From Selaginella moellendorffii (taxonomy: Eukaryota > Plantae > Lycopodiophyta), in the NCBI RefSeq assembly GCF_000143415.4, contig NW_003314281.1, positions 242,417 through 306,416 on the forward strand: a stretch of DNA of 64,000 nucleotides, written 5' to 3'. Position 1 is the first letter of the stretch, and every line of letters begins with the position of its first letter. Below the pieces are notes generated by a model. It did no database searches and was not told the origin of the DNA. It saw nothing but the letters and a program-made list of their open reading frames with translations. The position numbers and the translations under genes are program-made. Shown piece after piece: positions 823-59,631 of this stretch.

Positions 823-1656
823 TCAGTGCCTATCGTATCTATGGATTTTGTGTGCCATGGATTTCAAGGCTGGGACCCTTTTGGCGATTCCTCTCCACGT
901 CATGTGGACCGCGTCCTCGGGGAGCGATGGATGCTGGTACTCGAAGTGCCGCTCCACGCTCTTGAGCATCGCCCACTTCCGCGTCCACTCGTCCCGCCCG
1001 ATTCTCTCGAGCGCTCGCACCACGAATCCCTTGCGCAGCGCCTTGTCCGACTCCACAAACACGCAAAACTGCGAGTAGTCGAGCTCGTCCTCGAACGGCA
1101 GCTCGATCTCGTCGCTGATGATCACGGGCACGCAGTGGCTGGCGATGGCGTCGAACAGGCGGTTCGACGACGGCGTGTCGCCTGCCAGGTGCAAGCAAAA
1201 CTTGGCGTTCCTCATACCCGCGGTGGCGCTGCGGATGCCATCCTTTTGGGTGTTGCCCGTCACGAAGTGGACGCCCGGACTGTCCTTGAGGATCTCATAG
1301 AGTTTCTGCCTGATAATCCCGCCCTGTCCAGGAACAAAAAACCGAAAGAACAGCGCGTGAGTTACTTAGGCTGGCAGTGATCGATCTAAACGGCTTAACA
1401 GAAAGACCCAGGCTGTGATTCCACGATCGCGCGAGTAAAAAAAGGAAAAGAATACTGTTCATCAGAAAAGGACTGGCAGTGAATCATCACACGCTAGTGT
1501 TTTGCTTGGCGACAACGTCCCGGGACTAAAAATCAAGCAATGAATCATTCTCTCGTCATTCAGAGGAAGCCTGGCAGCCAGAAAAAAACCAAGAATCTCA
1601 AGCTTGCATCACCTGAAACGTGTTAAAGAAACCGAGAAACAATGAAGAAGGAAGAA

Positions 1657-1689
<33 letters not shown>

Positions 1690-2623
1690 CACAAGAAGAA
1701 GAAGAAAACAAAGAACTCAAACAAGGGAAAGACTGGCCTACCTCCTTTCTCACAATCGCGCCCTGGAAGAAGAGAAGCGTCTCACGGCTCTCAAACGTGG
1801 TAGCGTCGCGAGCAAACGATGGTATGACGTGCTTGTAAGGCGCCACTATATCCTTCCTCATGTTTGCCACCGCCCGAGAGAACCTCCCAAAGTCCGCTAC
1901 CACGAACATAGCCTCCTTGAGCAAGCTCCTGGCCACCATCAAGCTGTTTGGGTGATGCATCACAATTACGTGATCCGCCCCACCGTTCCTCCTCCACAAT
2001 TCCTGGCCCCTGAGAAACTCCACCAATCGTTTCTCCAATCGATCGTTCTCCACGCAGCCCCTACCCCCTTGGAATCTATGCCCGGTTCTACAATACCGAT
2101 TGTAGCTGAGCGATGAGAAGAACGGCACGAAGAAGATGTCCGCGGTGGCTGGATCGGCGACCCGGACAGCGCTACACGGGCTCTTGCGAGACGAGGGATC
2201 CGTGGAGCTCAAGAGATCCGCCGTGAGCCAGTACTCTGGGCTGTGCTGCTGGTAGAGGCCGCCCGGGTAGCGAGGAAGGCTGGAAATATTTCGAGGCCAC
2301 GGGCGACCGGAGATTGCCGCGTCGAGCATCCCGAAGTGGAATTCCGCTGGAAGATCATACATGTAAACCTTAAGAACACGATCGTCGAGCCCTTGAATCT
2401 GACACGAGGAGGAGAGCGATCGCGATGCTGACCTGGTGGTGCCAGTGGATGGGAGGAGCAGCGGCTTGAAGATCGTTGCGGCATCGCTAGTGTCCCCGTT
2501 CTTGGAGGGGGATTCGTCGTCGCGCGGGGGCCAGGCGAGGGAATTCTGCAAGATCGTGCCGGAGATTGCGAAGACGAGCAAGAAGGAGATGATCTTGACG
2601 ATGCACGATCGCGACGCCATGGT

Positions 2624-2654
<31 letters not shown>

Positions 2655-2737
2655 TTAGCTGACCATTCCGGCGGCGAATCGAAGAGGATTTGGGGTGACA
2701 CGGGGCTGGAAGATCGCTTGGAGAGCGCCACCGGCAT
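823..2737 (-). CDS. Exostosin/GT47 glycosyltransferase, ARAD1-like (2 exons: 2737 or 2621-1742; 1323-823)
   Basis: N-terminal TM anchor, then LKVYMYDLP, ADIFFVPFFSSLSYN, GGADHVIVMHHPNS, KDIVAPYKH, FCLHLAGDTPSSNRLFDAIASHCVPVIISD. A GT-AG intron at 1741-1324 joins IVRKE|GGIIRQ. Confidence 0.93.
1658..1688. repeat. (CA/TG)n microsatellite in the GT47 intron
   Basis: About 15 CA units, followed by GAA repeats. Confidence 0.9.
2624..2652 (-). repeat. (CAG)n repeat: polyQ or 5'UTR of the GT47 gene
   Basis: About 9 CTG units on the + strand, just upstream of the ATG at 2621. Confidence 0.85.
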
Positions 2738-4178: not shown

Positions 4179-4773
4179 TCACTTCTTCATCATCATCTTG
4201 ATGAGGCCCTCGTAGTTGATCATCCCCTCGGCATTCACCTTGGCATCTTTCATGAGCAAGTTGACCTCGTCCGGCGTGAAAACCTCCCCCAGCGTCGTCA
4301 CCACCTCCCGCAGCTCCGCCGCCGACACCTGCCCGTTTTGCTCCTTGTCAAACACCCGGAACGCCTCCCGCAGCTCCTCCTCGGTGTCATACTCCTTCAT
4401 CCTCCGGCTTACGTACCGCAGAAACGTGGGGAAGTCGTACAGCTTGTTCCCAATCTGCAGCGGATCCATCTCGAGGACCATCCCCCGGATCTCTGCCTGC
4501 GTCGGGTTCTGGACGACTGCTCGGAGCATGGGCCCGATCTCCTTGGCCGCCACAAAGCCTGCGAAACTGTTCTAGTCATTCGCAGGGACAGAGACGAAAG
4601 AAACACTTACCATCTTCGTCCTTGTCAAAGACGGAGAAGACTTCCTTGTAAGTAACGAGCTGGTCTTCTGTGAAAAGCTCCTCGATTGGCCGCTCGGGTT
4701 CGGGTGCGGGTGCAGGTTGGGCCGCAGGTGCAGGTACAGGTGCAGGTGCAGAAGTTGTTGCCACTGCCGCCAT
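4179..4773 (-). CDS. Calmodulin-like EF-hand protein with Ala/Pro-rich N-terminal extension (2 exons, ~50 nt intron near 4559-4609)
   Basis: FTEDQLVTYKEVFSVFDKDEDG|FVAAKE, QNPTQAE, DTEEELREAFRVFDKEQNGQVSAAELR align with calmodulin. EF2 and EF4 are degenerate. Confidence 0.9.
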
Positions 4774-4923
4774 TTGGCCCTAACTAGAATTTGAAACAGC
4801 AGCATATCCAAGGCATGAAGTTCTTTCCTAGTGAGGTTTTTTTTTTTTAGCAACTGAACTGCAAGGAAAGAAATAATAAGTTCGAAGGAAGAAAAGAAAG
4901 GAGAAAGGAGTAGAGACAAACCA

Positions 4924-7900
4924 CTAGGGGCGCAGGTCCATGTCCTGTGCAGGCTCCGTTTCTACCATCTCTTTGTCGCCCTTTTGATCTTCGTCGACGT
5001 GCGAGAAACTGTGCGTGCTGGCAACAGGGATGTGGCTGGGCAGCGCTGGAGGTCCAAACCACGAGAGAAGCACCGGGAGTAGCACAAAGCCGTTGAGGAA
5101 GCTAAGCACGCCCATGACTGCGAACATTGCGAAGTAGTAGATTCGGAATGCGTGGTACCTGATGAAGAGAGAAATGGCTGGATGATGAGAACGCAGGCTT
5201 GGGAGTTTTAAAAGTTTCGCTTACTTGAGAAAGACGAGCGGTAGAGTCGCGACCACTTGAGTTCCGAATCCATGGAGCAGGGGTTCCAGAGTCCACTCGA
5301 GTGCCTTCCCGACGCGGTAGTTCCTGGTTCCCTCCACCATCAGGAATGCTCGAGCAAGGTACGTGAGTTCGGCCGCCATTCCAATCTAGAAAATACCACG
5401 AGACAGCGTTAGAAACTGCCGAAAGGTTGCTAAACACATAGTACTCACAACTATGCCAAGGTTGACGAGCGAGAGGGCTGCAAGAGATAGATTGTCAGTT
5501 TTGGTCATCAGAGTAGGAACTACACGTACAGTTAAGTTTTGCACCGATAACGTAGATAAAGCCGTACACTTCCAAGTCCACCATGAGCAGAACAATCACG
5601 ATAAGGACCGAGATCACGATGCTGAACTGGAAAATGAGAACGGCCACAAATACTCCAACTGCAAAAGAAAAAACCAGTGAGCCTGCTTGAAAGGAATGGA
5701 CTGCTGACAGAAACTTACGTAACGCGAAGCCCACCACAATGTACAAGTTTCGGCTGCTGTGAAGATACTGTTCAAAGAAAAGGAACGGATACCCGTACAC
5801 GTAGCCAACATTTTCACCGATCTCGGCATTCATCTGGTCAGCTATTTTTCTGGTCTGTCTGATCATACGAAGATTTGGTTCCGTCTCGGCACCCAAGTGC
5901 TCTATAAAAATCTGTTTCACGCATGTAGAGTTCCATAAACATGAAAGGACGTATAACAAAACTGACTTACAGATGTCTTTGTAGCCGCAACTCGAAGATT
6001 TGGTTTGAATGTGGTAGTGAAACAATCCAAATGTTCTTTTGTAGTCTTGTCCTCGCAGTAGTAATCGGGCAGTGAAAAAATACCTGGACCAAAATCTTCA
6101 AAGATGAGCTTGCAAACTGAGCTTCTGTACCTATGGGCGTCGATGACCAGGCTTGCTGAGTCTGATCGAAAACGTCGACAGGGATAGTAAATAGCGGAAT
6201 CCCGGAGACATTCACAGGAACTGTTTTTATATCGGGTCTAGAATTAGCCGTGTAAACCATAATGTTTCCCAATACTGACGCTTCTAGAACCTGAAAGAAG
6301 AAAGAAGGCTGTGAGGCCATTGCGAAGAGGGGTAGTGATCCAAATTCTTATATGGACTAAGTGTCATCCTCCGCAAAAGGAACAAAAAGTCGATATTACC
6401 CTGGGTTGTGGAGGAGTCCAGTATGACAAGTTGCTTTGCATTGTCTCGTATATCTTAAGAAGATTTTCCTGGTTCCTCGCAAAATCAATATCTCGCGTCA
6501 CATAGTTCTGTAAATCAAGGTTCAATAAGAAACCATTGTGGGACTCAACCTTACAATTTGGTAGCTTAAGAATTTTCCCTCTGTTACGACCGCAAATGTG
6601 TTCTGGTACGAGCCTAGTTACAAGAAAATGTGTTGCTCAGAACGTGATGTGAGAAGGCTACCTTTCAGAGTTATATCGGATAGTAATAACCCGTGCTCGA
6701 CTTTTTCAAAGCCCAGGTAAGTTGTCACAGCGAGTAATGCTGAGAACAATACAAGCTGAAACCGTGCAGGGTTAGAACGAGAAAAACAAGGTTGAAGATA
6801 CGCACCACAACGACCTTGAACAGATTATTTTCAAATAGAGGAGCATAGTACTTTGCAACAGCTCGCGATACGAAGGATGTTCCAGTGACATGTCCACTGA
6901 AATTTCCAGGGGAGTCCTTTGACGCAAGCGGCCCTTCTACAAAAGCACACACACAAGATTAAGAAAACGCAAGCGGGTACCAAAACCGAAGAAGCGAACC
7001 TAGATTTTCCTTCTTTCGAATCCCGCAAAGCAGCCAAAGGTAAGGATCACAAACATTGGCCTGCGACATAGTGTTGAAAAAGACAGGTATAAATAAAAAC
7101 AGACTTACCTTCACTCGTCTGGCATCGATTGCCATTATCGGTATAAATATCAAAAGCATTCCTAGAGTATGAAGTGTTGCTGTGATCCCCATTTGCCAGC
7201 AAAACCACCTCACGATTGGCATTGGACTCTTCGTGAACAAAATAAACAAACTCCAATTAGCAAAGTGAAATACCAAATTGCAATACCGACAAGTGAAGAA
7301 ATGAAGAATGAAGCAAGAACAGAAAACGTTGTTAACACCACCGATGGACCCGCGAGAGCAGTCGTCATTCTCATCTCTGCTTCAGGTACTTTTGAAGTTA
7401 TGTCTTTGAGTGATGGATCTTTTAAGTAATTACGAAGCACGCTCACTAGCACAAAAACATCATCTATGCCTGACAATTGTACAAGATGTTAGCAATGTAA
7501 ACCATAACATTTGATGTCATGTACCCAGTCCCAGTGTAAGGAAAGGTACCACAGAACCGGCCAACGGGGTTAACTTGATTCCAACAGCAGCGCTAAACCC
7601 AAACCCAGCGATAACAGCAAGTGAAACTACAACCATTCCCTGCAAACAGAGAAAAAGGTTAGTTCCGATCGGTGATAAAACGTCCTTACGGTGAGAGCCA
7701 GCCATGTAAACGAGTGTACAGGGTCCTTGAAGTTGACAAAAGCCAGAAATGAGTATATCGAGACAAGAATGCCGCTAAGAACTATCTGCCACACTGGTGT
7801 TTTATTGGCATCCGAGATTATGTCTTCCGACGACCTCTGTAATCGAAGAAAGTCAGGAAAGTTTATCAAGCAGACGCGAAAATGATTGATTACATACCCA

Positions 7901-9673
7901 CATGTTGAACTCTAGCTGCAGGTCACCATAAATATTTTTGTCGCCAAATATTGTGCTTGGTTGGTGCTGTCGTAGAGGGTCCAGTTCGTTGATCATATGA
8001 GCTTCCCAGTCTTTAGTAAGCTGCTCCCTCTGTTTTTCTTGAAAACTTGTACCCAGTAAATTAGAGATGTACGATTCCCAGACCGGATGCCTTTGATGGA
8101 AATTGTTTCCGGCCCATCTTAATCCTTTGATCTGAGAGACATAATGAATCAAAATTACAGTTGTGAGCAGACGACTAGTACGTGTAAGTTTCAAGTAGTA
8201 ACCTCGGTGATGTTCCCAGAAGCATCGTACTTCAGACTACCCAATGACGTTAGAGTTGGGCTGTGTGCTCCAAACCATGTCATGCAGCACGGTTGCGTTC
8301 CAGAGAGGCAGTCCACAATCTATGTGACGGTAGTGAGCATCAAAAACTCGCTTTAGAAATATAACCTGAGGATTTGTCGGATTCGGATCAGCAGACTTTC
8401 CAAATCGCAGGGCAGCATTTATGTGATCTAGAACCTGAAATTTTTCAGAGCTTATTTTCGAGCTTGAGTTCGCAAACTGAATAAATTACTTGCTGATTGG
8501 TCATGCCTGCGTATGATTTTCTCCAGCTGTATCCCCATGTCAAAAGAAGCCGAGACAAACCAGTAACTCCCTGGACAAGCTGAAACATACTGTATAAGTT
8601 AAGAAACTAGGAAACCATAAACTTTAGAAACCTCATTGACGGTGTTTTCATCGATGTTTAGAGCTGTGTAGTTACTGCGAACTTCCGTTTGACAGTTTCC
8701 GTTAGGGATGACAGCAATTTGAGCGATGCGTAACCCGGAGACAGCTGAATCATAAACCATAAAATAGAATATGTACTGCGAGCAAATAAATCAAGAGAAG
8801 TGTACCTTCTTGTTCAAGTAGTTTTAACGCTGGTGGATAGTCAAAATCGCCTCCTTCTTTAAAACAGTCTAATGCCGATAGTTTCAGACAAGGAAGCCAG
8901 TCTATACCCCATCCATCGGGTAAACGCAGTTCAGGAGGAGCATTCAGCGCCTCTAAGGCACAATTTGCATATTTTGAGTATCCCCATGAAATGAAGTTTT
9001 TGTTCTTCAAAGGGTCTGTACCAGACTTTATGTAATCCGGCACAACAGGCCTCTCACAGAAATCGTTCTGCAATAGAAAATGGTCTTAATCTGAAACCAA
9101 TGAAGACATCATCACATATCATACCTCGCGGAAGTTATATGTCTTTCCGTTTATCGTTCTTGTCATGGTCAAGTTGTCATAGAGAGGAGTAATGGATGAC
9201 TTAAGAGCGTCCATCGCATGGACCAAGTTGTAATCCTTGCCATCCCGTGGTGTGATTGTGACTGCCTCGAGCCGAGAAATACCCCCGAATCTGAAACCAG
9301 ACAACGTTACATTTATACGAACGAAATTCAAACAAGAGAACCTCGAATCGAAAAACTCTTTCTCTTCCACGACGCGAGAGTTTTGCTCAACCCATAGCTT
9401 TTCCAGATCGGCTTCCTTCTTCACATTAAAAAGACCAAAAGAAATTCCTCCAAGCAGGACGAGTCCAATTCTGTGAAAGTGAAAAGAGAAAAAACTTATC
9501 GCGGCAAAAACGCAAGAGCGAAAATCGTACATGAGCGGAACAGTCGGACGACGAGCTGCAAACGATCCATACCGCTCAAACACCTCGTTCATTGCTCTGT
9601 GATATCCATCGAGCACACCCTGCAAAGCGAGAAAGCTCAACACAGCAACCAAACCAAAAACGGCGCTCACCAT
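4924..9673 (-). CDS. Patched-like 12-TM RND/sterol-sensing-domain protein, roughly 20 or more short exons
   Basis: Patched-type motifs in order: LEKLWVEQNSRV, PCLKLSALDCFKEG, SSD VVPFLTLGLG|IDDVFVL, AGPSVVLTT, IMAIDARRVK, KYYAPLF, VEHGLLLSDI, GYPFLFFEQY, IGMAAELT...ALEWTLEPLLHG, LNGFVLLPVLLSWFGP. No NPC1 N-terminal Cys-rich domain. The ATG at 9673 is probably followed directly by a 51-nt GTGAGC..TTGCAG intron. Confidence 0.88.
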
Positions 9674-9965
9674 CTTCAAAGCGGAGAAGTTTGAAAGCTT
9701 AACAGATGCTTTGAAGCGAGACAGCCACCATAGCCAGGGAATGACACTGCTGCTCCTGCTATTTCACGTGAGGCCAGAACTTTGTAGGCTCCGCGCGAAA
9801 TGACGCGCTTTGTACTGAAGTTGAAAGAAACAATAGTAGAATATTACTCCGTCGGCATCAAAGTGCCTTTTGTATTATAGCGCGCAGGTTTAAACCTGCG
9901 ACCATAACGAAGTAAGAAAACTCGAGGACACACCATCGTCTACCTCCTATACGAAAGATAAAGCT

Positions 9966-11104
9966 TTAGCTGTGGTTGGCGGCCCTGGCCCTTCGTTTGT
10001 TCTGGATGGCTCGAACGTACTCCGAGATCAAGACATGGAGCTTGGGAGCGCCTTTGCCAGCAAACGCTCCCAGTGGAGGCACCGTGTTGTTATTGGCGGC
10101 CCTCTTCATTACTCGAGCAGCTTGCCTCTGGGCTAACTGGAAGTGAATGGCGCAAAAAGATGGCACTACCGCACGAAGAACGGGTTTCCCACAAGTTCCA
10201 TTCGGGGCACTGGAAGGAGAAAAAATAGCAACGTGAGACGCATGAAACACCAATGTCAATGGACTTGATGAAATGTCAAGAACTTGTCTAGCAAGAAATA
10301 AAAAATAAAATCCTATCCAGCACGAATGGCATGACATAGATTAAAGCACTTTTCTAGCAAGAAAAAAACTAATTCTAGCGAAGAAAGACAAGATGCAAAG
10401 AAATTGATCATATCTCTAAGAACGTAAACTCCTATCCACCATGTCACTACCAATGCATAGAGTATGACTAAAACAAAAGAAAGAAAGAAACCCAAAGACA
10501 CGAAAAAAATTCTAAGGAAGGAAAGACTCGATCGATCGAAATATCACACGGCATACCTGCGAGGAACGAATGCGCACGGCTTGTACAAGCACTGGCGAGG
10601 CTCCAAGAGAATATGATCGAAGCAATAGGCGCTGAGCGGCATCGGCTTGGTCATGCATCCCTGGAATCCACACTTGATCGCCTCCCCGGCCGATCGCTCG
10701 GGCACTCTCATGTCCACATTGCCCGGCTGCTGCGATTCCTCCGCCTCATTCTCCTCGCGCCAGCCGCTCTTCCCTGTCCGGAGATAGAACCTCCGGTACT
10801 TGGCGCGCAGCTCCTCGAGCAATGCCCAATACTGTACCCGATAGAGCTTGATCAGCTGCCTCACCCTTCGCCGCCGGCGCTTGACGACCTCGGCCCTTGT
10901 CATCACCATGGATCGCGATAGCATCTCGTCCTCCTCGGCGCCCTCCATCGCCACCGCTGGCACACACTCCTGTGGATCCTGTGAGAAATATCCCTCATCC
11001 TCCACGAATCTCTCATCCGGCGCGGCGCTCTCCGCCACCGCCGCCGCTGCCGTGGCCGCGGCTGGCACAGCCACTGGCGGAGCAATCCCTTGCCTGCGCG
11101 CCAT
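9966..11104 (-). CDS. INO80 subunit D / KANSL2-like protein with zf-C3Hc3H domains (exons 11104-10557; 10209-9966)
   Basis: TRAEVVKRRRRRVRQL..LYRVQYWALLEEL, CGFQGCMTKPMPLSAYCFDHIL..PRQCLYKPC, CGKPVLRAVVPSFCAIH, KLHVLISEYVRAIQNKR. Canonical GT-AG intron. Confidence 0.85.
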
Positions 11105-11432: not shown

Positions 11433-12767
11433 TCAGCGAGAAAAAAAAATTCGCGACGTGATCAAGTACCTGTCCAAAGCGGAAGAGATCTCGGTTCCAA
11501 GGAGTTTGCACTGGATGATCTCCAAAGCCCAGCAGATCACGTCAAACGGAGGCCTTTCTTCCGGATCTTCATGCCAGCACTGCTGGATCAGCTTCGCCAA
11601 GCTCGAGTCGACGGAACTCGGCAGCCGAGGCCTCTTCCCGGCTCGTTTCAACCCAGGGATGATCCAGTTCCCACCCCGGATCTTCTCCAAGAACTTCTCG
11701 GGCGACAACTCCTTGTACTTGTCCAGCGGAGTCTCTCCCGTGAGGACCGCGTAGAAGGTCATTCCAAAGCTGTAAACATCGGCCTTGTCCGTGTAAGAAC
11801 ACTTTGATCCTTCGTCACCCTGGAGAACTTCTGGAGCCCAGTAACAGTGCGTCCCTCTTCGAGCCGTGAGCTTCCCGTCATCCACGGATCTGGCAGTGCC
11901 GAAATCTCCTAACTTCACCTCTAGACCGCTGGGAAAAGTCTGGTTGAATCGAACGAGGAAGTTTCCCGGCTTCACGTCCCGGTGGATCAATCCAAACGCG
12001 TGCATGTACATGAGAGCAGTGGCGAGCTGGAGCATCACGTCGATCGCAGCTTTCTCTTCCAGCGGTAGATGATGGGGGTCTTTTTCAACCTTGTTCTTGA
12101 TCCAGGTCTGGAGATCGCCATCCATCAGCTCCATGATCAACCCGGCGCCAGAGTGATTGCCACTGCTACTGCCACTCCCGCTGATGGAGTAGCCATGAGG
12201 CTTGACAACGTGAGGATGGTCCAGCGTGAAATGGATCACTGCTTCGTCCTGGAGGTGTTCTTCCTCGCTAAACAGCTTGATCGCAAATTCCTGTTTCGAC
12301 CAAGTACACTTGTGGATGGCACCGTAAGCTCCTTGCGCTAGAAAGATTCCCATCTGGAAGCTCGCGGCCCTGGGAAGAGCACCCAAGATATCCTCCACTG
12401 TACCACCGATTCGCGGAGGAAATCTCACATTTTCCATCTGGAGCCACAGATTTCCGAGCTCGACCCTGTTGCTCATCTTCGGAAAGAACATGTGAAGCCA
12501 CCGGTTGATCTTGAAAGGCTTGTAGACGAGCTTGAGAGGGCCAAGGTATGCCGTGGTCGTAGTCTTGACGTCGAGAGACTCGAATGTCATGGAATAGGAC
12601 GTCGCCAGCGCTGGAATCAGGGACGAGAAGCTAAGATCGTGGGAGTACCTTACCAAGATTTTCTGCGATATCTCTTGCGCCTGCTTCTCCGTCGCTGGAT
12701 CCTGGTACTCGAGCCCAGCGAAGGGATCTTGCAAGACATAGCTGCCGAGGAGCAATTTGCGCGCCAT
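11433..12767 (-). CDS. Intronless protein kinase (TKL/Raf-like) with an unrecognised ~130-aa N-terminal region
   Basis: 444-aa ORF with AQGAYG, FAIK, HRDVKPGN, DFG, WAPE, DVYSFG, CWHEDPEERP. Confidence 0.92.
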   Translation of the reverse strand: MARKLLLGSYVLQDPFAGLEYQDPATEKQAQEISQKILVRYSHDLSFSSLIPALATSYSMTFESLDVKTTTTAYLGPLKLVYKPFKINRWLHMFFPKMSNRVELGNLWLQMENVRFPPRIGGTVEDILGALPRAASFQMGIFLAQGAYGAIHKCTWSKQEFAIKLFSEEEHLQDEAVIHFTLDHPHVVKPHGYSISGSGSSSGNHSGAGLIMELMDGDLQTWIKNKVEKDPHHLPLEEKAAIDVMLQLATALMYMHAFGLIHRDVKPGNFLVRFNQTFPSGLEVKLGDFGTARSVDDGKLTARRGTHCYWAPEVLQGDEGSKCSYTDKADVYSFGMTFYAVLTGETPLDKYKELSPEKFLEKIRGGNWIIPGLKRAGKRPRLPSSVDSSLAKLIQQCWHEDPEERPPFDVICWALEIIQCKLLGTEISSALDRYLITSRIFFSR

Positions 12768-13341: not shown

Positions 13342-14643
13342 CTAGAGATCGAAATCGTCGTCCTTGAGAGCTTCTTGCGCGGCCTCCTCCTCCTCGTCGT
13401 CCAGCACAAAGTACGGGTTGTGGACGACCGGCCGGAACTTATAGCCAGTGAAGAGATAGAATGCCAGAGTCGCGGCCTCGGCCGCGAAGCTGCTCGACCA
13501 TCGGTACTGGTATGGCGTGATCGTTGTCAGCGCAAACACCACGATCCGGGTGAAGTAGATGTAAGTCACGACGACGATGTAGTACTGGCGGAAGAGCGTG
13601 AGCTTGACGAGGTTCCTGGCGGCCTTTCCATCCGAGTGAGAGGCCTCTCTCAAGTGCTTGATCGACCAGACGATGGGGAAGAGGATGGCGCAGCAGCAGA
13701 TGATATCGAGCAACAGGAAGAGCTGGCGCCAGGTAAACCAGCTCTTGGTCGCCGGCCCGGTCTCGTCGATCACGATCGAGGCAACGTTTGCAAACACCTG
13801 GAGCGGGATCACCACCATCAACACCTTCTTCTCCTTGTCCTGGAGAAATGGCTTGAGGAACGACCACCCGGTCCCGACCAGGACGATCACCGTGAAGAGC
13901 ATCACACCCTTGAGGAAACCCGAGATGTAGAAGATCACGTCCCAGCCGTGCGCGGTGCCGGTCTTCTTGATGTAGCTCTTGTCCTCGGCCTCGGCGAGCA
14001 AGTTGAGCACCTTGAGCGCGAGAAGAACTCCCATGAGGATGTGGATCCTGTGCGTGGTCTCCTTGTGCTTGGCGCAGAAGTAGATCCAGAGGGCCGTGAG
14101 CGCGATGTAGACGAGCGCGAAGGTGAAGAACAGCGCTGGGAGCTGGGTCTGGCCGGCCGGGAGGAAATCCTTGACACTGCCCTCCAAGTTGTACATGGAA
14201 GTCTCCACGATCATCGAGACCTGCGAGTGAGCGTGGCAATTGATGAAGAAGAGCGAGTACTCGTTGCCATCGGCCACCGGGAAGGTGTTGTTGTAAGTCC
14301 CGCCGCGGCCATCGACCTCGTTGAGGCGGAGCAAGGCGCGGATCTTGGGATTGGCGAGGATGCACTGGTTCGGCTGCTTCTCGACGTCGGCGAAGACCTG
14401 GAGGAGCGCTTCCTCGGTGCTGAGGAAGAAGCCCATGAGCGAGAGATCGGCGTCGGACGAGACGTGGACCTCGGACACGAAGATCCCCACCTCGCCGCGG
14501 TTCGTGAAGCCGAATTTCTCGAACATGATGAGCGGGCGGCCATCGTCCTTGATCTTGGTGCTCTTGATCTCGGCCACGGCCAGCAGCGGCAGGAGCAGGG
14601 CTAGAATCACGCCGAGGATGCTGACCCTAGGAATGGCCGCCAT
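13342..14643 (-). CDS. GPR107/lung seven-transmembrane receptor (LUSTR/CAND7-like) protein, intronless
   Basis: Signal peptide, EIKS..IKDDGRPLIMFEKFGF, YSLFFINC, TGTAHGWD, GTGWSFLKPFLQDKEKK, LLDIICCCAILFPIVWSI, LFRQYY..YIYFTRI, YKFRP. Confidence 0.95.
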   Translation of the reverse strand: MAAIPRVSILGVILALLLPLLAVAEIKSTKIKDDGRPLIMFEKFGFTNRGEVGIFVSEVHVSSDADLSLMGFFLSTEEALLQVFADVEKQPNQCILANPKIRALLRLNEVDGRGGTYNNTFPVADGNEYSLFFINCHAHSQVSMIVETSMYNLEGSVKDFLPAGQTQLPALFFTFALVYIALTALWIYFCAKHKETTHRIHILMGVLLALKVLNLLAEAEDKSYIKKTGTAHGWDVIFYISGFLKGVMLFTVIVLVGTGWSFLKPFLQDKEKKVLMVVIPLQVFANVASIVIDETGPATKSWFTWRQLFLLLDIICCCAILFPIVWSIKHLREASHSDGKAARNLVKLTLFRQYYIVVVTYIYFTRIVVFALTTITPYQYRWSSSFAAEAATLAFYLFTGYKFRPVVHNPYFVLDDEEEEAAQEALKDDDFDL

Positions 14644-17044: not shown

Positions 17045-20000
17045 ATTATTTTTACCAGGAGGTCCAATTGATAATTAAAACATACAGCAAATACTTAAAT
17101 TTCTTGTGCATAAATTCCCTGGTAACAGAATATATTGAAAGGTGAAGAAGTGTCTTGTTGCGAAATAGAAATTGCAGTAAACCTTCCAAAATGTAACTCC
17201 AAAAAGTATTTGCATAGCACCTCTATTAATTGCATCATCTCCAAAAGAATTAAAGGATGAAGATAAAGACTATTTTCTTAGTATTGGGAATTAAAATACT
17301 ATAAACTGAACTATTAACAGTTAATATAGATCTTAAATAGGAAGCTTTTGTAAATCAGCTAAGAGCTATTAATAGATTAGGTTCTTAGAAACTAAACTTG
17401 CTTATTTGCTGCCCAATAAGAATCAGAGATATGTGATCAGGCAGCCAATTGCAAATTCATGTTACCTAAGGAGATTTGGATTTGGGTATTTGCAATTAGA
17501 GGGAGATCATAGACATATGAAAGATTGTTCTTCTTAGGAACGTGATGAGATGGGTTTTGGAATAGGACATAAATGGCAGCCTCATTTGAACATCTATGGT
17601 TGGAGAGTTGGAGATCAAAAAGTTAAAGAGAATGACTACATAAGTAATATAAAAGAGAGGTGTTTGTGACTTTGTGAGGTCAAGCTGGGCCTAACTCCAT
17701 CCCTTCAGGGCTTTTGCATTCAAATTTTCGTGTGTTTGAGAGTGTGAAGTGGAGCAGTTCGAGGTTTATCCCACATAAAGGCCTTGAGTTGAGTTGTAGT
17801 GAGAGTTCTAGTGTTTATGTGGGGAATCCCCCTATTCAACATCTAGGGTTACAACATGTTCTAGTGTGTTAATGCCCTTGCCATGGGGTTTCTTGTGGGT
17901 CTTTTAGCCAGTTAGAGAAATCTAATGCCCCCAAAAGTTTTATGAGTGTCTGAGAGTGAGTTTGATAGTAGTAATGTGTCTTGTCCTTGTTGGGTCTTTT
18001 GCTTGAAGCTTCTATAAGTTGTGTCTACACTTTAACAGCCTTTTGGAGTTGCATGTGGGCAAGATCAATACTTGAGGGCTAATGGAGCTCTAGCCAACAC
18101 TTTTGTAGTTTTTAAGTTAAACAATCAAGCTGGTGACACATGGAAGTTCTAGTAAGTTTAAGTTTTCACACTTAGGATCAGCCAAAGTAGATTTAGAATC
18201 TGACTGTTCTAATGATCTTGAAGGAGTTATGGTGAGCAAGATTTTAATGCCACAAGCTTGTGAGGAATTTTCTTGGGGTCTTCAGCATCAATCTTGGGGT
18301 GACATAAATGAGGTGAAATATATATATATGAATCATTAACAACAAATAGTAATTTGTAAGCATTTGGCTAGATGGCTATAACAGGTTTTGGTGCCTCATA
18401 TTTAGCTTTAGAACAATAGAGGACCAAACAACTACAAAGAACCACCATGATTTAAGCCAAGCTAATTGAAATAAATTCTAAGATTTGCAAAGAGACTACA
18501 TTGAGTTTTTTAGTGTTATATGACAATTTTGCATCATTCCACCAATATTAACATAGTCTTCCAAGATGAGGATGAGGATTTAGAGGAGGTGGTAGAGGCT
18601 GAAGTTAAAGACTATTTGGAATACATAAGGACATTTTTAACTTTGGAGATAAATGGCAATTGGCATCTATTGTGGAACACAGTTCTAAAGATGGAAGAAA
18701 AGAGCATTTTATGTCAACATTGTTGAACAATCAAGGAAGTGTTAAAAGTAGAAATGCTTGTAAGTAGCAAACAGCAAAAAAAAAAACTGCAAAAGACTGA
18801 CTAATAGCAATTAAAAAGGTTGCAAGAGGTCTATTTGAGGGGGTTTAGGTTACTTAGAGATGTCATTTAAAGTAAATGCTCAAATGAGTTGTAGGCATGT
18901 TTTTGTGTTGAGCATATTTATGGATTACTAAGGTGAAAATAAACTCTATAGAGGATAGAGGAGAAAGGAATGAAGTCTTAATGAATTTAGTAGAAACTAT
19001 AACTCTTTTTGTCATAGATGTGGAATTAAATTAGGATTTAATCCAAGTTGAGGGTAGGAATGGTAAAAATAATTATTTTTTTCGTAAAATAGAAGCTTTC
19101 TTGCCAGATTTTTTATCAAATGGATGAGTAATGGTAGTAGAAATCTATATTGTAACAAAGTTCGAGGACAAAGAGTTGGTTATAGTCACAAAATAAATAT
19201 CTAAGTCAATATCTCAAATTGTTTTTGTTTAAGCATTTCCAACTTGAATAAGAACCAATAAGAGTCTTATAATATGGTTGAATGCTATATAATTAAAGCT
19301 AGTAGAGGTAGAAAATAAATACATATGCCCACTACATGGATGATTTAGGCATTTACCAACTAATTTGAGTTGAAGCTTTTAGAGGAGGTAAAAACGTAGT
19401 AGAAACTTAGCCAATTAAAGAAACTTAGTGGTTTTAAGTAGAACTTAAACAAAATTGAGCATTTATGGAGTTGTTGAGCTGATAAATTAAAGCATCCAAA
19501 AAATGAAAAAGGAAAAATGATTAGAGATACAAATGTGGTAAAAATTTATAACTAATTAGGGAAACTCAATGGTCCTAAGTAGACTTAAACAAGGATATGA
19601 TCTAGCTTCTAAGATGGGTATTTCCAAAAGGTGTTGAGTTGCAAGTTAAAACATCTAAAATAAAAAAATGAAGAATGGATAAAGATACTATTAAAAAGGT
19701 AATAAAAACTTAATTAGGGAAATTCAATGGTTCCAAATTTAAAATTTAAAGAAAGGGATCAGAAAATGGCTTAAAGGCCCAATAACCTCATGGAAAAGGA
19801 TAAATGGTTAGCAATACCCCTTGAGTTTAGAGAAATAAGTAAAATTAAAGATATTAAAATCCATCTACTATAATGTAGTGTATATTTATTTGATAGGGGA
19901 TAGTCTAAAGTTGAGTTGAGCTCAACTTAGCATAAGTAAACTCAAATCAATAAAAATCTTACAAAAGAAATCTAAATTGAAGAAATGAAGGTTCTGGCAA

Positions 20001-22240
20001 ACTTTTAATTATTGAAATACATAAATATCTAAGTTAAAAGTTTCTATTAGATTGAGTAGTTTAAAAAAACAAAGTTTATGAGAACCTATATTTTATAAAG
20101 CTATAGTATTTTACTATGACTATTATTACAACTATCATACTTTTGTTTGACTACTTAATATTTTGACTACTTTTATAGCTGTACATATTATTCCTTTATT
20201 TAAAATATTTTTTTAGGGTTCTTGAGAAGTAAAGAAAATAAAAGATATATGAGTAAGAGTTGTAGTGCAAAGGATTGTAAAAATATTAATTTTATTTCAC
20301 TGCCATAATTTCTATATTACACTCTAGTCCTTATTACTCATATGAGAATGTGAAGACAACTGTCACCATTGATAAATACTCATGTTACTTTTAAAATAAT
20401 AATCTAGAGAAAGAGAAATGAAAAAATAAATAACACAGCAGAAAGAACCAAGAAATTTACACCATAAACTTTCTATAATATTTGTAAATTATATATTAAT
20501 TCATATAAAAAACTCTATTGCTTGTCTACATTGCAATCCTCCTGTATGAATAGACCAAGGTATATTTTTGTAGTGAATCCCAAATAAGAGTTTTTGGGAG
20601 TTTTTTGTGAATATTAATAAAAGAAATTAAAATCTTTTGAAAAAGTCAAAAGTAATATCATATGAAAGAATCAATTTATCTACATTTCCAAGTCTCACAC
20701 AAGAGAATAATAGTGTGCTAGCATGCCCTACCATTATAATGTGGTCTATATTTCCCTATAGTTTATTTCTCTAGAGAATTGGCATGTGTAGAAAAGAATA
20801 TATGCATAGTGAAGTAGGATTTCATTAAAATGATAGAGCACGTGTATGCACAATAATCTAGAAATCTAGAAGCTTTTATGTTTACAAGTAAACTATGATT
20901 ATGAAGTTTTATTTCAGAGACTAATATTTCAAGAATTTAAGTATTGTTGGTATTATAATAAATAAACCTTATTCCCAAGATTAAAACTTAGTATATAAAC
21001 TACCTAGAAAAGTTATTATCATCATAATTTTTTTGATCTCCTTAAACTCCTTAAAAGTTTGTATAGAAATGGCTTGAAAGAAAGTCATTGCTACTAGTAC
21101 TTGCCCCTTCCCCCCGCCTAACATTTTATATCAATCTTCACCTCCATCCCTAAGTTCTACAAACATTCCACCTTCACTTCCACATAATAATCTTTTTTAT
21201 GCTATGGGCTCTAATAAAGTTAAACTAAAGCTCCTGATATATAAAATTCTGGATCTTGCTACTAAGGAGGGATTGCCTCAAACACTTCAAGAGCAATGCC
21301 ATATGTTTTTGCAAGATCTTGACATGGCAAGACTATTTAAAAGCATAGAACACTATTATATTTAATGTCTAATATACTACTTTTTTTTGGATAAGACAAA
21401 TGGCTCTATGGGTTTATAAACTTTTCTTGAGCATTGTAGCAATTGCCTAATGGTAGGTCTAGAAAATGTGCATATATAGATGTACAATAGATTCAAGAAT
21501 AAGTTACGGACACATACCCACTACCACTTCATGGTGAGGAACAACATCCCCTTGGGAAACATTGCATTAACTAATGCAAAATATAGGGTTTTTAGGCCAT
21601 AGTGGAATGTAAGATCTAGAATTATTTACTATATTATAGTATATCTCAAAAAAATATTAATGATATTAGTTGTAGGTAATATACCTTGTTCTAGATGGTG
21701 CTATCATATCATATACAAATGTTTACTAGATGTTGAAGGAGATAGCAGCACACAAGTTCTATGAAGTGATGGTGACAAATGAAAAAAATAATTTGTAATT
21801 ATGATATCTAACACTAACACTATCACTGACATATGACACTTTCACAGACATCTGATATATAACAAGTTTTTCATTTTATGCAAGGATGCAATTAACTTTC
21901 TTTTACCTCATCATCAATATATTGATTCCTTTTATACCTCCTTCTATATTGGTATTATGGGGAAGATTTGAGCTATGGCTTCTGCATAGTTAGGGAGACT
22001 TCCAAAGCCTTTAATTCTAGAAATTATAAGTGATTGTGATCTATAAAATAGAACTAAACATGTATTGAAACATAATTTATCTTCTTGAGATTGGAGGCAA
22101 CTCACAAAATCCTTTGAGCTGGTGTTTGAAAAAATGATGTTTTTCAATAGCAAACACTAACTTACTAAAGTTATATACTGCCTCTACCATAGAATCGTTA
22201 CTTATTGTGCAACCAATCACAATACTATCTAGTGGGCAAT
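17045..22240. mobile_element. AT-rich, heavily decayed transposon-derived sequence (possible LINE RT remnant near 21310-21530)
   Basis: Abrupt drop in GC/CpG and no long ORFs. LDMARLFKSIEH weakly resembles the LINE RT motif LD.EKA.D.V.W. Confidence 0.35.
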
Positions 22241-23509
22241 TGTAGTGTATATGGTTTTTACCCTTAATCTTATGGTGATTTACCATAGGTTAACCACGAA
22301 GTGGAACCTAACCATATGTCATATGCCACATGACACATGCCACGTGTCCAAAGGATAGTGGTGTAGAACTGGTTTTGATGTCCTTAGATTATGAATTTGG
22401 ACACAAGATGAACACCATTGTGTTTAGGACAATCTCTACATTTTGTAGATCGGCTCAGTATAAGAAACTCATATATTGGCTTGCACTTGCTAATGTTAAG
22501 AACCCATATAGTATTGAGTCTGATCCCTTAATGTTTGATAGGTGATAGTTTATTATATCTACTAAGACACTCTCATTATCATGCCCTTTGTGTTGGTTTC
22601 CATTAGCTATTTATAGAAAATATCTAGATCTATTAATTTGGCATATCTAGAACACCAATATAGTTGCTATTAATCAATTTTATTAACACCAAAACAAAAC
22701 TAAAAAAATAAAAGCAATTCACCACTCAAACCTTTCTAGCAACCAAACTAACTAATGTCGAAAATACCTTGCTCAGTATCCAAAACCAATCCTTCAACAA
22801 TACTTAGTTACAAATAAATATATCATCAAGGAGTAATTCACTATATCTAAGACTTAATATAACCCACAATCAAATGATATTAAAAGAAGTAGAGTCGACA
22901 TACTAATATGGAAAAACCATGTAAGTTTAATAATACGACCCTCCATAACACCATTTGGTAAAGCAAAATCATCACTGCTAAATCATCATTGAGCGAAGAA
23001 AGTATCAACAATCCTTGACAAAATCTACAAGTAATCACTAGTTGCAAAGCAACCAACAATCACTCTTTAATTTGCCTTTACAAGTCCCAAACACTAAACT
23101 CATATCATCAAATTATATATTTGTCTAACATCATATAGAAACATGGACAAGTATGGACAACATGACCACTTAAATCCAATTGAACCATAATAATCTCACC
23201 AACACGTGTAGCTAATAGCTTTGAACATGCTTTGAAGAGGTGAGCTATATATGATCAACACTTAGCCAAAACTAAAGTGAAGACCATAAGACGGACTTAT
23301 ATGGTATACAACCTCCTCATATACAAAGCTATAGTATAGGTATTAATATCTCAACTGCAAACAACTAAGTTGGACATCACCATCCTTGTCTAAAGTGTAA
23401 GGCTACTATTGAATAACAACAATATTAACACCTCCATTTCCACATTGAATCTACTAATTTTTCTATTGTGTAGACTAGATCTTAACATGTAAAGAAACTA
23501 GTCAACCAC

Positions 23510-23955
23510 CGACGAGTGGGGTAAGAATATTCTGAAGGAATATTCAAAATGGTGGATCTAGAAGGAGAACTAAAGTTTGGTAAACCCTAAGAGAAGGATC
23601 ATGGTGACCGGAGGGTGGCCTAAGTATGATTGCAGCCGATCATTCTCTACGAGGGGAGGATTGTTAGACACCAGGTCAGGATAATAAGATAAAGAAAGGG
23701 CCCTACAATCAAGTGATCACCCCTTTAGCCAGTTGGTTTAGGGTGTAAGGGATAGGATCCTAACATTTTCAACACTTAGCCAAAACTAAAGTGAAGACCA
23801 TAAGATAGACTTATATGATACACAACCTCCTCATATACAAAGCTATAGTATTATTAGGCACTAGGTCAGGATAATAGGATAAAGAAAGGGCCCTGCAATC
23901 AAGTGATCACCCCTTTAGTTAGTTGGCTTAGGGTGTAAGGGATAGGATCCTAACA
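23510..23955 (+). mobile_element. Degenerate TRIM (internal region plus LTR, LTR tandemly duplicated)
   Basis: Matches the 31057-31450 TRIM: internal segment, PPT, and LTRs at ~23662-23765 and ~23852-23955 ending GATCCTAACA. Confidence 0.85.
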
Positions 23956-25127
23956 TTTTCAACACTTAGCCAAAACTAAAGTGAAGACCATAAGATGGAC
24001 TTATATGATACACAACCTCCTCATATACAAAGCTATAGTATAGGTACTAATATCTAACTCCAAATAACTAAGTTGGACATCACCATCTTAGACAATATAC
24101 AAAGCTATAGTATAGGTACTAATATCTCAACTGCAAATAACTAAATTGGACATCACCATCTTTGTCTAAGGTGTAAGGCTACTATTGAATCACCATCTTT
24201 GCCTAAGGTGTAAGGTTACTATTGAATAACAACAATATTAACACCTCCATTTCTACATTAAATCTACCAATCCTTTCATTGTGTAGATTAGCTATTCCAT
24301 GTAAAGCAACTAGTCATCCACCCGTACTATAGTCCTATGGTGGATACCTTTGTTCGTGGATATTCCACATAAGAGGAAAGATATATGCATGGATGCCCAA
24401 TACGTACGATTTCAAATTTAGGGATAAGAATATATCTTGCTCAAGAGTATATTATATTTTTAAGTAACCACTAATTAATGAGAATTGAACCTGTGCCATT
24501 TGCTCCGATACTATATATAGCGCATCTTATCTCTCTCCCCTTAAACCAACTAGAAAAGGGGCAATTGCTTGATGAGAGAGCCCTTAATAGCTATTTTATC
24601 CCTATTTATCCCATAAAGTTCTAAGAATTCACAATAATAGTATTTCCAAATCTCATCCTATGATCATATGCACTATAGTTACCAATATTAAGTCAAGATT
24701 AATGAATGTTCACTACTCTCATAAAGTATAATAAAATGCAAAGTGCAACTTGCCACCAAGCATAATAGTACAAAAGAAAGGCATAAAAGTCACCTTTCTA
24801 GAATAGTGTAACAACCATTTTTCTACACTAACTATAGACTCTATCGTTTTAGCCCCAAAAGTTACCATCCCTTTTGAGTCATATTATATAAAGGTCTAAG
24901 TTAACCAAAGTTAACTCCAACCTTATTATTAGTTTGTAATAACTTTCAAAAACAGAATGGTTTTTGGCCAAGTGATCAATAAATTAGCATTGGAAAAACC
25001 TAAGAAAATTTATGAAAAATTTTATATCCTAGAGAAAGTATAACTCTCAGTTTAGGAGTACAAACTTTCAAGACTCAACCAACTTCCTCTTATCACAACT
25101 TCATATAGGTTCATCTTAACACAAATT

Positions 25128-59594: not shown

Positions 59595-59597
<3 letters not shown>

Positions 59598-59631
<34 letters not shown>
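59598..59631. repeat. (ATT)n microsatellite
   Basis: About 11 ATT units. Confidence 0.9.

What the first reader, a model, noticed from the sequence alone, without database searches (positions are those of the whole stretch)
4924..9673. A Patched-type transporter (not NPC1) in a land plant, with the acidic transport triad intact
Seen in sequence: the spliced product follows animal Patched motif by motif. Plant vs recalled PTCH1: LWVEQNSRV vs LWVEVGGRV; PCLKLSALDCFKEG vs PCLIITPLDCFWEG; VPFLTLGLGIDD vs LPFLALGVGVDD; KYYAPLF vs KHYAPFL; GLLLSDI vs GLDLTDI; YPFLFFEQY vs YPFLFWEQY; IGMAAELT vs VGIGVEFT; LNGFVLLPVLLSWFGP vs LNGLVLLPVLLSFFGP. The TM4 GxxxDD and TM10 GxxxE residues are kept and the NPC1 N-terminal domain is absent. 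Established: Patched is the cilium-associated, cation-coupled sterol transporter/Hedgehog receptor. Plants lack Hedgehog and Smoothened, and the angiosperm RND/SSD proteins I know are NPC1-like. Inference: this is an ancestral, Hedgehog-independent sterol transporter that may be retained in plants with flagellated sperm to control ciliary membrane sterol. Its many native short introns argue against contamination or recent transfer.
Basis: partly seen in the sequence, partly recalled or inferred. Interest (0 to 1): 0.9.

Follow-up and report, generated by a model that had tools for sequence, protein, structure and literature searches.

The report
Patched-like lipid transporter gene, spikemoss
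This spikemoss gene is intact and transcribed, and it encodes a membrane transporter resembling the animal Hedgehog receptor Patched; public databases already name it that way, flowering plants appear to lack it, and the proposed link to swimming sperm is not supported.

Summary
A 25-exon minus-strand gene (ATG 9673, stop 4926-4924, introns 46-109 nt) encodes 1118 aa. The product is letter for letter the RefSeq entry 'protein patched homolog 2 isoform X1 [Selaginella moellendorffii]'. All eight motifs are present. TM4 G527xxxD531D532 and TM10 G989xxxE993 are intact. No NPC1 N-terminal domain is detected. Contigs of three RNA-like runs show the spliced form.

It is not an orthologue of the animal Hedgehog receptor. 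It belongs to a separate clade: liverworts, mosses, lycophytes, ferns, the conifer Cryptomeria, five unidentified eukaryotes and a choanoflagellate. PTCH1 is the closest solved protein by sequence and fold, but NPC1 is not far behind. Rooting on the internal duplication did not order the three groups. Placement relative to PTR/PTCHD/DISP could not be tested.

The best angiosperm hits are NPC1-like only. Presence in a conifer, and spliced mRNA in RNA-like runs of eight studies, argue against a sperm-cilium-only role. A Chlamydomonas patched-related protein is, however, reported in cilia.

The most likely function is a cation-driven sterol or lipid transporter that works without Hedgehog. A 2022 review already noted unstudied PTCH homologues in green algae, so this is a new member of a known kind.

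The parts
4924..9673 (-). Whole coding region of the Patched-like gene: 25 exons, 24 introns of 46-109 nt, 1118-aa product
   Evidence: Model; product identical to RefSeq P0044; spliced RNA contigs
9531..9673 (-). Exon 1 (start codon, N-terminal helix, start of TM1)
9342..9470 (-). Exon 2 (TM1, LWVEQNSRV)
9125..9290 (-). Exon 3 (extracellular domain 1)
   Evidence: (contig pieces)
8806..9067 (-). Exon 4 (ECD1; the PCLKLSALDCFKEG motif lies at 8893-8852)
8632..8744 (-). Exon 5
8490..8579 (-). Exon 6
8366..8434 (-). Exon 7
8320..8365 (-). 46-nt GT..AG intron missed in my first model; removing it restores the reading frame
   Evidence: Joint 8319/8366 in X4, X5 and X13; frame check
8203..8319 (-). 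Exon 8
7898..8131 (-). Exon 9
7690..7836 (-). Exon 10 (TM2, start of the sterol-sensing domain)
7525..7639 (-). Exon 11 (TM3 and the first part of TM4, VPFLTLGLG)
7291..7469 (-). Exon 12 (rest of TM4 with D531 at 7464-7462 and D532 at 7461-7459; TM5)
7109..7228 (-). Exon 13 (TM6)
7000..7060 (-). Exon 14
6806..6936 (-). Exon 15 (cytoplasmic loop, KYYAPLF)
6662..6755 (-). Exon 16 (TM7, GLLLSDI)
6555..6613 (-). Exon 17
6400..6507 (-). Exon 18 (ECD2)
6131..6290 (-). Exon 19 (ECD2)
5971..6083 (-). Exon 20 (ECD2)
5719..5911 (-). Exon 21 (GYPFLFFEQY, TM8)
5530..5658 (-). Exon 22 (TM8-TM9)
5449..5477 (-). Exon 23 (29 nt)
5225..5385 (-). Exon 24 (TM10 with G989 at 5382-5380 and E993 at 5370-5368; TM11)
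4924..5158 (-). Exon 25, coding part (TM12 LNGFVLLPVLLSWFGP, short C-terminal tail, stop at 4926-4924)
4861..4921 (-). 61-nt GT..AG intron in the 3'UTR, two bases after the stop codon
   Evidence: Loose ends at 4922 in X4, X5 and X13 match window 4831-4860; sequence read

Best explanation
This is a native, intact, transcribed Selaginella moellendorffii gene. It encodes a 12-helix RND/sterol-sensing-domain transporter of the Patched type in the broad sense, and it works without Hedgehog. The protein belongs to an old eukaryotic clade, which I call PTL here, that is separate both from the animal Hedgehog receptor PTCH and from NPC1.

Proposed mechanism (inferred). A cation moves down its gradient through the TM4 D531/D532 and TM10 E993 relay. 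In a plant cell this cation is most likely H+ supplied by the plasma-membrane proton pump. The cation flow drives alternating conformations. These move a sterol or similar lipid between the sterol-sensing domain (TM2-6, residues ~455-630) in the membrane and a conduit formed by the two extracellular domains (residues ~66-445 and ~712-912).

Shown here: gene structure, expression, fold, motif conservation and phylogenetic distribution. Inferred only: substrate, coupling ion, membrane of residence and physiological role. The role is not confined to sperm flagella.
For: Gene model and identity to RefSeq. Spliced mRNA contigs in three laid runs; RNA-like holders in eight studies. Plant-type neighbours. 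Pfam SSD and Patched SSD only. PDB sequence search: PTCH1 176 bits, NPC1 149, NPC1L1 119, DISP1 21; for residues 440-1080 alone, PTCH1 165 vs NPC1 114 bits. AF2 model: pLDDT 82.7, pTM 0.79, 12 TM helices plus two ECDs. Fold comparison: PTCH1 Z 47-50 over 876-902 residues at rmsd 2.8-4.1; NPC1 Z 44-46 over ~817-835 residues; DISP Z 36-38. The triad and PTCH-type motifs are conserved across plant and protist members, where NPC1 has GVDN..YFQN and LHG. D532 is invariant, and D531 and E993 are nearly invariant, in 33 sequences. ML tree: PTL clade 99*, land-plant subclade 100* and congruent with the plant phylogeny. Precedent: C. elegans PTC-3 and PTR proteins act without Hedgehog (quoted in PMC9222137).
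Against: No transport assay, localisation or mutant exists for any member. The margin of PTCH1 over NPC1 is modest. NCBIfam scores Patched (231 bits) and NPC1 (214 bits) almost equally, both far below their cut-offs. Rooting on the internal duplication does not resolve the order of PTL, PTCH and NPC1. The DD/E triad is ancestral to RND pumps, so it does not by itself identify the substrate. The ESM Atlas searches by language-model features and by shape put PTR/PTCHD3-like clusters at least as close as PTCH, and these could not be put in a tree.
Confidence: 0.6

Rival explanations
1. One reading: the transporter is kept only in plants with flagellated sperm, and it sets the sterol content of the ciliary membrane of spermatozoids.
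For: Orthologues are found in liverworts, mosses, lycophytes and ferns, and none appears among the angiosperm hits. In Chlamydomonas a 'patched-related receptor', Cre12.g496350, has been found in ciliary proteomes, enriched in gametic cilia (PMC9561859). A review asks whether the algal PTCH homologues act at flagella (PMC9222137).
Against: The conifer Cryptomeria japonica has no flagellated sperm (established botany), yet it keeps a copy. That copy is 54% identical over residues 249-1081, has the triad intact, has an ordinary branch length, and sits where a seed plant should. Spliced, near-full-length mRNA lies in contigs of the three RNA-like runs laid, and RNA-like holders come from eight studies. 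Selaginella sperm form inside shed microspores, so it is unlikely that all of these samples held sperm; the tissues are coded, however, and were not verified. Orthology of the Chlamydomonas protein to this clade was not tested.
Confidence: 0.12
2. The protein partners the Hedgehog-type self-processing (Hog/Hint) secreted proteins of non-flowering plants. It would either release lipid-modified peptides, as Dispatched does, or take them up or sense them, as Patched and PTR-18 do.
For: Secreted Hog-domain proteins are reported in Selaginella and Physcomitrella and were not found in Arabidopsis or 'higher plants' (PMC2362128). That is the same coarse distribution as this gene. This scan holds about 35 unchecked first-reader notes of Hedgehog-type autoprocessing genes in this genome. 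C. elegans PTR-18 clears a Hedgehog-related protein (quoted in PMC9222137).
Against: This is co-occurrence at a very coarse level only. No plant Hog protein has been shown to be lipidated. No linkage, co-expression or interaction was tested. The scan notes are unverified. Similarity to Dispatched is weak (21 bits; Z 36-38).
Confidence: 0.1
3. It moves a non-sterol hydrophobic cargo, such as cuticle, wax or spore-wall precursors, terpenoids or xenobiotics, as many RND pumps do.
For: The fold and acidic relay are shared with the bacterial hopanoid (HpnN), mycolate (MmpL3) and drug pumps, which also match the model at Z 35-37. NCBIfam HAE3 hits at 57 bits. Nothing in the sequence fixes the substrate.
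Against: The closest relatives with known cargo (PTCH1, NPC1, NPC1L1, NCR1) all handle sterols. The sterol-sensing domain is the best-conserved part.
Confidence: 0.15
4. It is a divergent NPC1 paralogue that lost the N-terminal domain and works in an endosomal or vacuolar sterol exit route.
For: NPC1 scores are close to PTCH1 scores. In the midpoint-rooted full-length tree PTL sits on the NPC1 side of the drawing root. The constrained PTL+NPC1 topology is not rejected.
Against: No NPC1_N or NPC1_MLD domain is detected. TM4 has DD, not DN. The ECD1 and TM12 motifs follow PTCH, not NPC1. The plant NPC1 clade is separate at 98-100 support. PTCH1 aligns over more residues at lower rmsd.
Confidence: 0.03

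Closest known systems
Animal Patched (PTCH1/PTCH2), the Hedgehog receptor and sterol transporter
   Same: 12-TM RND fold with two extracellular domains. Best solved match (Z 47-50, ~880-900 residues aligned, rmsd ~3 A). TM4 GxxxDD and TM10 GxxxE are shared. So are the PC..LDCF.EG, GL.L(S/T)DI, GYPFLF.EQY and LNG.VLLPVLLS..GP motifs.
   Different: Only ~20-25% identical. It lies outside the vertebrate PTCH clade. It scores 231 bits against the TIGR00918 cut-off of 1120. The TRA2_N domain (PF27572), which was listed for nearly all the PTCH proteins retrieved, is not detected. The middle loop is short and the C-terminal tail is ~40 aa. No Hedge-domain ligand or Smoothened is known in plants (from knowledge; not tested here).
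NPC1 / NPC1L1 / NCR1 sterol transporters, including the angiosperm NPC1-like proteins
   Same: Same fold and sterol-sensing domain, with nearly as good scores (149 bits; Z 44-46).
   Different: No NPC1 N-terminal domain or NPC1_MLD. NPC1 has GVDN in TM4, C..S.L.YFQN in the first luminal domain and LHG in TM12. The plant NPC1 proteins form a separate, well-supported clade.
Chlamydomonas 'PTCH homologues' Cre02.g093500 and Cre12.g496350 (the latter is a ciliary 'patched-related receptor')
   Same: Green-lineage, Hedgehog-independent, uncharacterised Patched-family proteins. The literature already proposes that they reflect an ancestral sterol-handling role (PMC9222137, PMC9561859).
   Different: Their sequences could not be fetched, so orthology with the land-plant clade is untested. 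The land-plant gene is also kept in a plant without cilia.
Nematode and insect PTC-3/PTR proteins and vertebrate PTCHD proteins
   Same: Patched-family transporters that act without canonical Hedgehog signalling. The ESM Atlas feature and shape searches list PTR/PTCHD3-like clusters first (score 0.98; TM 0.70/0.81).
   Different: No PTR or PTCHD sequence could be obtained, so no alignment or tree was made. At 1118 aa, with a ~380-aa ECD1, the protein is longer than the ~810-1020-aa clusters listed.
Phytophthora Patched-like protein PsPTL (PMC8530017)
   Same: An NTD-less SSD/Patched-domain protein in a non-animal organism, named 'Patched-like'. Its knockout had no detected phenotype.
   Different: In that paper's tree the oomycete proteins cluster with the NPC1 homologues. 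Its relation to the clade described here was not tested.

Membership tests
RND superfamily, eukaryotic sterol-sensing-domain branch | Sterol-sensing domain (TM2-6) detectable by curated profiles | tested here: met
   PF12349 at 82 bits (cut-off 22.3) and PF02460 at 59.7 bits (cut-off 23) on residues 466-634
RND superfamily, eukaryotic sterol-sensing-domain branch | Pseudo-symmetric 12-TM fold with two large extracytosolic domains | tested here: met
   AF2 model with pLDDT 82.7; Z 36-50 to PTCH1, NPC1, DISP, HpnN and MmpL3; the two TM halves align to each other
RND superfamily, eukaryotic sterol-sensing-domain branch | Charged relay: TM4 GxxxD(D) and TM10 GxxxE | tested here: met
   G527-D531-D532 and G989-E993 align to the PTCH1/PTCH2 residues and are conserved across 33 family members
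Patched proper (PTCH, the Hedgehog receptor; NCBIfam TIGR00918) | Score above the curated family cut-off | tested here: not met
   231.4 bits against a cut-off of 1120.4
Patched proper (PTCH, the Hedgehog receptor; NCBIfam TIGR00918) | Falls inside the PTCH clade in a tree | tested here: not met
   PTL (plants plus protists) forms its own clade at 99*; vertebrate PTCH2 plus P0131 form another at 98*. Only vertebrate PTCH2 was sampled.
Patched proper (PTCH, the Hedgehog receptor; NCBIfam TIGR00918) | PTCH-type ECD1 and TM motifs (PC..LDCF.EG, GL.LTDI, GYPFLFWEQY, LNGLVLLPVLLS) | tested here: met
   Alignments with PTCH2 and PTCH1; NPC1 differs at each of these motifs
Patched proper (PTCH, the Hedgehog receptor; NCBIfam TIGR00918) | Binds a Hedgehog ligand and represses Smoothened | not testable with these tools
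   No Hedge-domain or Smoothened search was possible. The literature reports only Hog-domain proteins in Selaginella and Physcomitrella (PMC2362128).
NPC1 (NCBIfam TIGR00917) | N-terminal sterol-binding domain (PF16414) and NPC1 middle luminal domain (PF22314) | tested here: not met
   Neither is reported for P0044. Both were listed for nearly all the angiosperm NPC1-like hits.
NPC1 (NCBIfam TIGR00917) | Score above the curated cut-off, and clade membership | tested here: not met
   214.3 bits against a cut-off of 1016.5; the NPC1 clade is separate at 98-99*
PTR / PTCHD (Patched-related) | Groups with PTR/PTCHD sequences in a tree | not tested
There are leads only: Atlas feature score 0.98 and shape TM 0.70/0.81 to PTCHD3-like clusters.
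Dispatched | Closest similarity to DISP | tested here: not met
   DISP1 scores 21 bits, E 5e-4; Z 36-38 at rmsd 7-8 A
Ciliary gene set (kept only in organisms with cilia) | Absent from lineages without cilia | tested here: not met
   Present and conserved in the conifer Cryptomeria japonica. Not found among the angiosperm hits.

The most novel reading that the evidence does not exclude
Non-flowering land plants may keep both halves of a Hedgehog-like lipid-peptide system. One half is the many secreted Hog/Hint self-processing precursors. The other is this Patched-like RND transporter, which would release them or take them up. Both halves would have been lost together on the way to flowering plants. 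That would be a plant counterpart of the nematode 'Hedgehog-related plus PTC/PTR' arrangement.
Probability: 0.1. Interest if true: 0.85.

Novelty: new member of a known kind. Interest (0 to 1): 0.5.

Why it matters
Patched-family transporters are central to animal development and cancer, yet their ancestral, Hedgehog-independent job is still debated. The family was already known in protists and noted, unstudied, in Chlamydomonas. This locus and its orthologues show that a Patched-like clade runs vertically through liverworts, mosses, lycophytes, ferns and at least one conifer, and was apparently lost in flowering plants. I found no paper that discusses this, although databases already carry the name. 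Marchantia and Physcomitrium are easy to knock out and have simple sterol biology. They therefore offer a direct way to ask what such a transporter does when no Hedgehog or Smoothened is present, and whether it relates to the plant Hog-domain proteins. The finding is not a new kind of system.

Tried and rejected
(1) My first 24-exon model had a one-base frame excess in exon 7. I considered a pseudogene or a homopolymer assembly error. I rejected both when RNA contigs showed a 46-nt intron at 8365-8320.

(2) Contamination or recent transfer, suggested at first by the short nematode-like TTTCAG introns. I rejected this because the neighbours are plant genes, the product is identical to S. moellendorffii RefSeq, and the tree matches the plant phylogeny.

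(3) Pfam and PDB searches with single exons gave only sub-threshold or no hits.

(4) The third homologous-protein search, with a protist-only profile, returned only the query. The second was swamped by angiosperm NPC1.

(5) The genome-contig scan for a bacterial outgroup gave one 208-bp fragment.

(6) Rooting on the internal duplication (N-half against C-half). The N-half tree put PTL with PTCH at SH-aLRT 89, and the C-half tree was a polytomy. AU tests rejected neither PTL+NPC1 (p=0.75) nor PTCH+NPC1 (p=0.87), and the constrained trees even scored higher. The result is inconclusive.

(7) DNA of the Cryptomeria locus could not be fetched because the gene spans 137 kb. Whether the ~250 N-terminal residues missing from its models are a gap in the annotation is therefore unknown.

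(8) The organisms behind the protist relatives P0028, P0032, P0033, P0035 and P0064 could not be named from their contigs.

(9) Literature searches found no paper on a land-plant Patched-like protein.

Full report
**What is there.** The finding's coordinates are exact. On the minus strand an ATG at 9673 opens a gene that ends with TAG at 4926-4924.

My first hand-built model had 24 exons and summed to 3403 nt, one base out of frame, with a stop inside exon 7. Fifteen splice joints were listed and all agreed with the model. One further joint skipped 46 nt between 8319 and 8366 in all three RNA-like runs and was absent from the DNA run. Removing that GT..AG intron gives 25 exons, 24 introns of 46-109 nt (median ~56) and a 3357-nt CDS with a single terminal stop.

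The 1118-aa product is identical, residue for residue, to P0044. NCBI names that protein 'protein patched homolog 2 isoform X1 [Selaginella moellendorffii]'. So the window is S. moellendorffii, as earlier scan notes had guessed.

A 61-nt intron lies in the 3'UTR at 4921-4861.

**Is it native and expressed?** The neighbouring ORFs are a GT47 exostosin, a Ser/Thr kinase, a CAND6/7-type seven-helix protein, a zf-C3Hc3H protein and Ty3/gypsy chromoviruses. This is an ordinary plant nuclear setting.

Seventeen RNA-like runs from eight studies hold 40-52% of the stretch's 31-mers. That is about what fully spliced mRNA should give, since the exons are ~70% of the stretch. The three runs I laid carry intron-less contigs of 1.3-3.1 kb. 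The tissues are coded, so I cannot say which organs were sampled.

**What family is it?** Pfam finds only the sterol-sensing domain (82 bits) and Patched SSD (60 bits). It finds no NPC1 N-terminal domain and no NPC1_MLD.

- Against PDB sequences, PTCH1 is best (176 bits, E 5e-51), then NPC1 (149), NPC1L1 (119), yeast NCR1 (97) and DISP1 (21).
- For residues 440-1080 alone the gap widens: PTCH1 165 bits against NPC1 114.
- NCBIfam scores Patched at 231 bits and NPC1 at 214. Both are far under their cut-offs of 1120 and 1016.
- An AlphaFold2 model built on 33 family members (pLDDT 82.7, pTM 0.79) shows twelve TM helices and two extracytosolic domains.
- Foldseek ranks PTCH1 first (E 8e-38, TM 0.68/0.77), then NPC1L1 and NPC1.
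- VIA-align gives PTCH1 Z 47-50 (876-902 residues, rmsd 2.8-4.1 A), NPC1 Z 44-46 (~817-835 residues, rmsd 4.0-4.6 A) and Dispatched Z 36-38.

- TM4 reads LGLGIDD. PTCH has GIGVDD and NPC1 has AVGVDN.
- TM10 reads IGMAAELT. PTCH has VGIGVEFT.
- The first extracellular domain has PCLKLSALDCFKEG. PTCH2 has PC.I.TPLDCFW.G and NPC1 has C...S.L.YFQN.
- TM12 has LNG, as PTCH does. NPC1 has LHG.

D532 is invariant, and D531 and E993 are nearly invariant, across 33 plant and protist members. 'Triad intact' and 'Patched-like rather than NPC1-like' therefore both hold at the level of characters.

**But it is not the Hedgehog receptor's orthologue.** A search of 1.84 billion cluster representatives with exons 21-22, followed by two word-indexed searches, recovered full-length relatives.

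- At 50-57% identity: liverworts (Riccia, Marchantia paleacea, Calypogeia), mosses (Ceratodon, Physcomitrium, Sphagnum), the lycophyte Diphasiastrum, ferns (Adiantum, Ceratopteris, Pteridium) and the conifer Cryptomeria japonica.
- At ~30% identity over the full length: five unnamed eukaryotic sequences and one from the choanoflagellate Salpingoeca urceolata.

Summed BLAST scores within this set are 380-660 bits. Against vertebrate PTCH2 they are 170-340 bits and against NPC1 150-275 bits.

In an ML tree (45 sequences, 1068 columns, LG+C20) the set is one clade (SH-aLRT 99). The land-plant part is one clade (100) whose branching follows the plant phylogeny: lycophytes, then bryophytes, then ferns with Cryptomeria as their sister. 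Vertebrate PTCH2 and NPC1 form separate clades.

That tree is unrooted, so it cannot say which of PTCH or NPC1 is nearer. I tried rooting on the internal duplication of RND proteins, using TM2-6 against TM8-12. The N-half gave PTL+PTCH at 89 and the C-half gave a polytomy. AU tests rejected neither alternative. That question stays open.

The Atlas feature and shape searches list PTR/PTCHD3-like clusters at least as high as PTCH. This keeps that possibility alive.

**The cilium hypothesis.** Cryptomeria japonica carries a copy with these properties:

- Two independent gene models exist, spanning 137 kb.
- It is 54% identical to the Selaginella protein over residues 249-1081.
- Its TM4 reads GLGIDD and its TM10 reads GMSSELT.
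- Its branch length is ordinary, and it keeps every invariant column that it covers.

Conifers have no flagellated sperm (established botany). Together with the spliced mRNA in the RNA-like runs laid (holders listed from eight studies), this argues against a role confined to spermatozoids.

Two things keep the idea from being dead. First, no angiosperm orthologue appeared: the best angiosperm hits to the family profile were NPC1-like proteins at 432 bits or less, against more than 1000 bits for orthologues. Second, in Chlamydomonas a 'patched-related receptor' (Cre12.g496350) is repeatedly found in ciliary proteomes (PMC9561859). I could not test whether that protein belongs to this clade.

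**What was already said in print.** A 2022 review notes that PTCH homologues exist in protists. It names two unstudied ones in Chlamydomonas, suggests that PTCH is the oldest member of the pathway, and asks whether they act at flagella (PMC9222137). Another paper states that Patched is found only in animals (PMC3495828). I found no paper on a land-plant member.

'Plants lack Hedgehog' needs a qualifier. Burglin (2008) reported secreted Hog-domain proteins in Selaginella and Physcomitrella and none in Arabidopsis or 'higher plants' (PMC2362128). This scan also holds ~35 unchecked notes of such genes in this genome. That coarse co-distribution is the basis of the speculative 'novel case'.

**Mechanism.**

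- Shown: an intact, transcribed gene; an RND/SSD fold closest to PTCH1; a conserved acidic relay; vertical descent in non-flowering plants.
- Inferred: a cation, probably H+ given the plant plasma-membrane proton gradient, passes D531/D532/E993 and drives movement of a sterol-like lipid between the SSD and the extracellular conduit. This would work as in PTCH1 and NPC1, independently of any Hedgehog ligand.
- Unknown: the substrate, the membrane in which it sits, and its physiological role.

**Verdict.** This is a new, already auto-annotated but unstudied member of a known kind. It is moderately interesting as a route to the ancestral function of Patched-type transporters.

Noticed in passing
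window 4861-4921 (-) and 4500-4860: A 61-nt GT..AG intron sits in the 3'UTR two bases after the stop codon. RNA contigs continue at least 237-255 nt beyond it. One 1548-nt contig (X13, record 9) seems to run on into the next minus-strand gene. That gene's ATG is near 4782, only ~140 nt downstream, and its product has an Ala/Pro-rich N-terminus followed by an EF-hand-like segment.
   Followed up: partly
window 1598-2737, 10544-11104, 11433-12767, 13342-14643 (all -): The neighbouring ORFs are plant-type: GT47 exostosin, zf-C3Hc3H, a Ser/Thr protein kinase and a CAND6/7-GOST seven-helix protein.
   Followed up: partly
window 31874-43000 (+) and 50875-55463 (-): Ty3/gypsy chromovirus copies with gag, protease, RT, RNase H, integrase and chromodomain ORFs. 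At least two copies lie in opposite orientation.
   Followed up: no
window 18000-28000 and 58000-64000: AT-rich blocks (GC 0.29-0.35) stand against a gene-rich background of GC 0.45-0.56, with strong local GC skew at 18-20 kb and 24-26 kb.
   Followed up: no
window 4900-9700, DNA run X1 and RNA run X13: About 40 single-base differences and a 1-base deletion at 8441 (intronic) separate the window from the X1 and X13 contigs. Many of them are shared between the two runs, which looks like a second haplotype or strain of the same species.
   Followed up: no
L003 (JGI metagenome contig, 14.9 kb): The protist relative P0028 is called as a single open frame of 1183 aa on a gene-dense contig, next to calpain, LON-substrate-binding and MFS sugar-transporter genes. 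The organism is not identified.
   Followed up: no
L004 (208-bp contig filed under Gelidibacter salicanalis): A 208-bp contig in a bacterial assembly encodes a stretch 32% identical to residues 464-536 of the plant protein. It is probably a stray eukaryotic or RND fragment and too short to judge.
   Followed up: no
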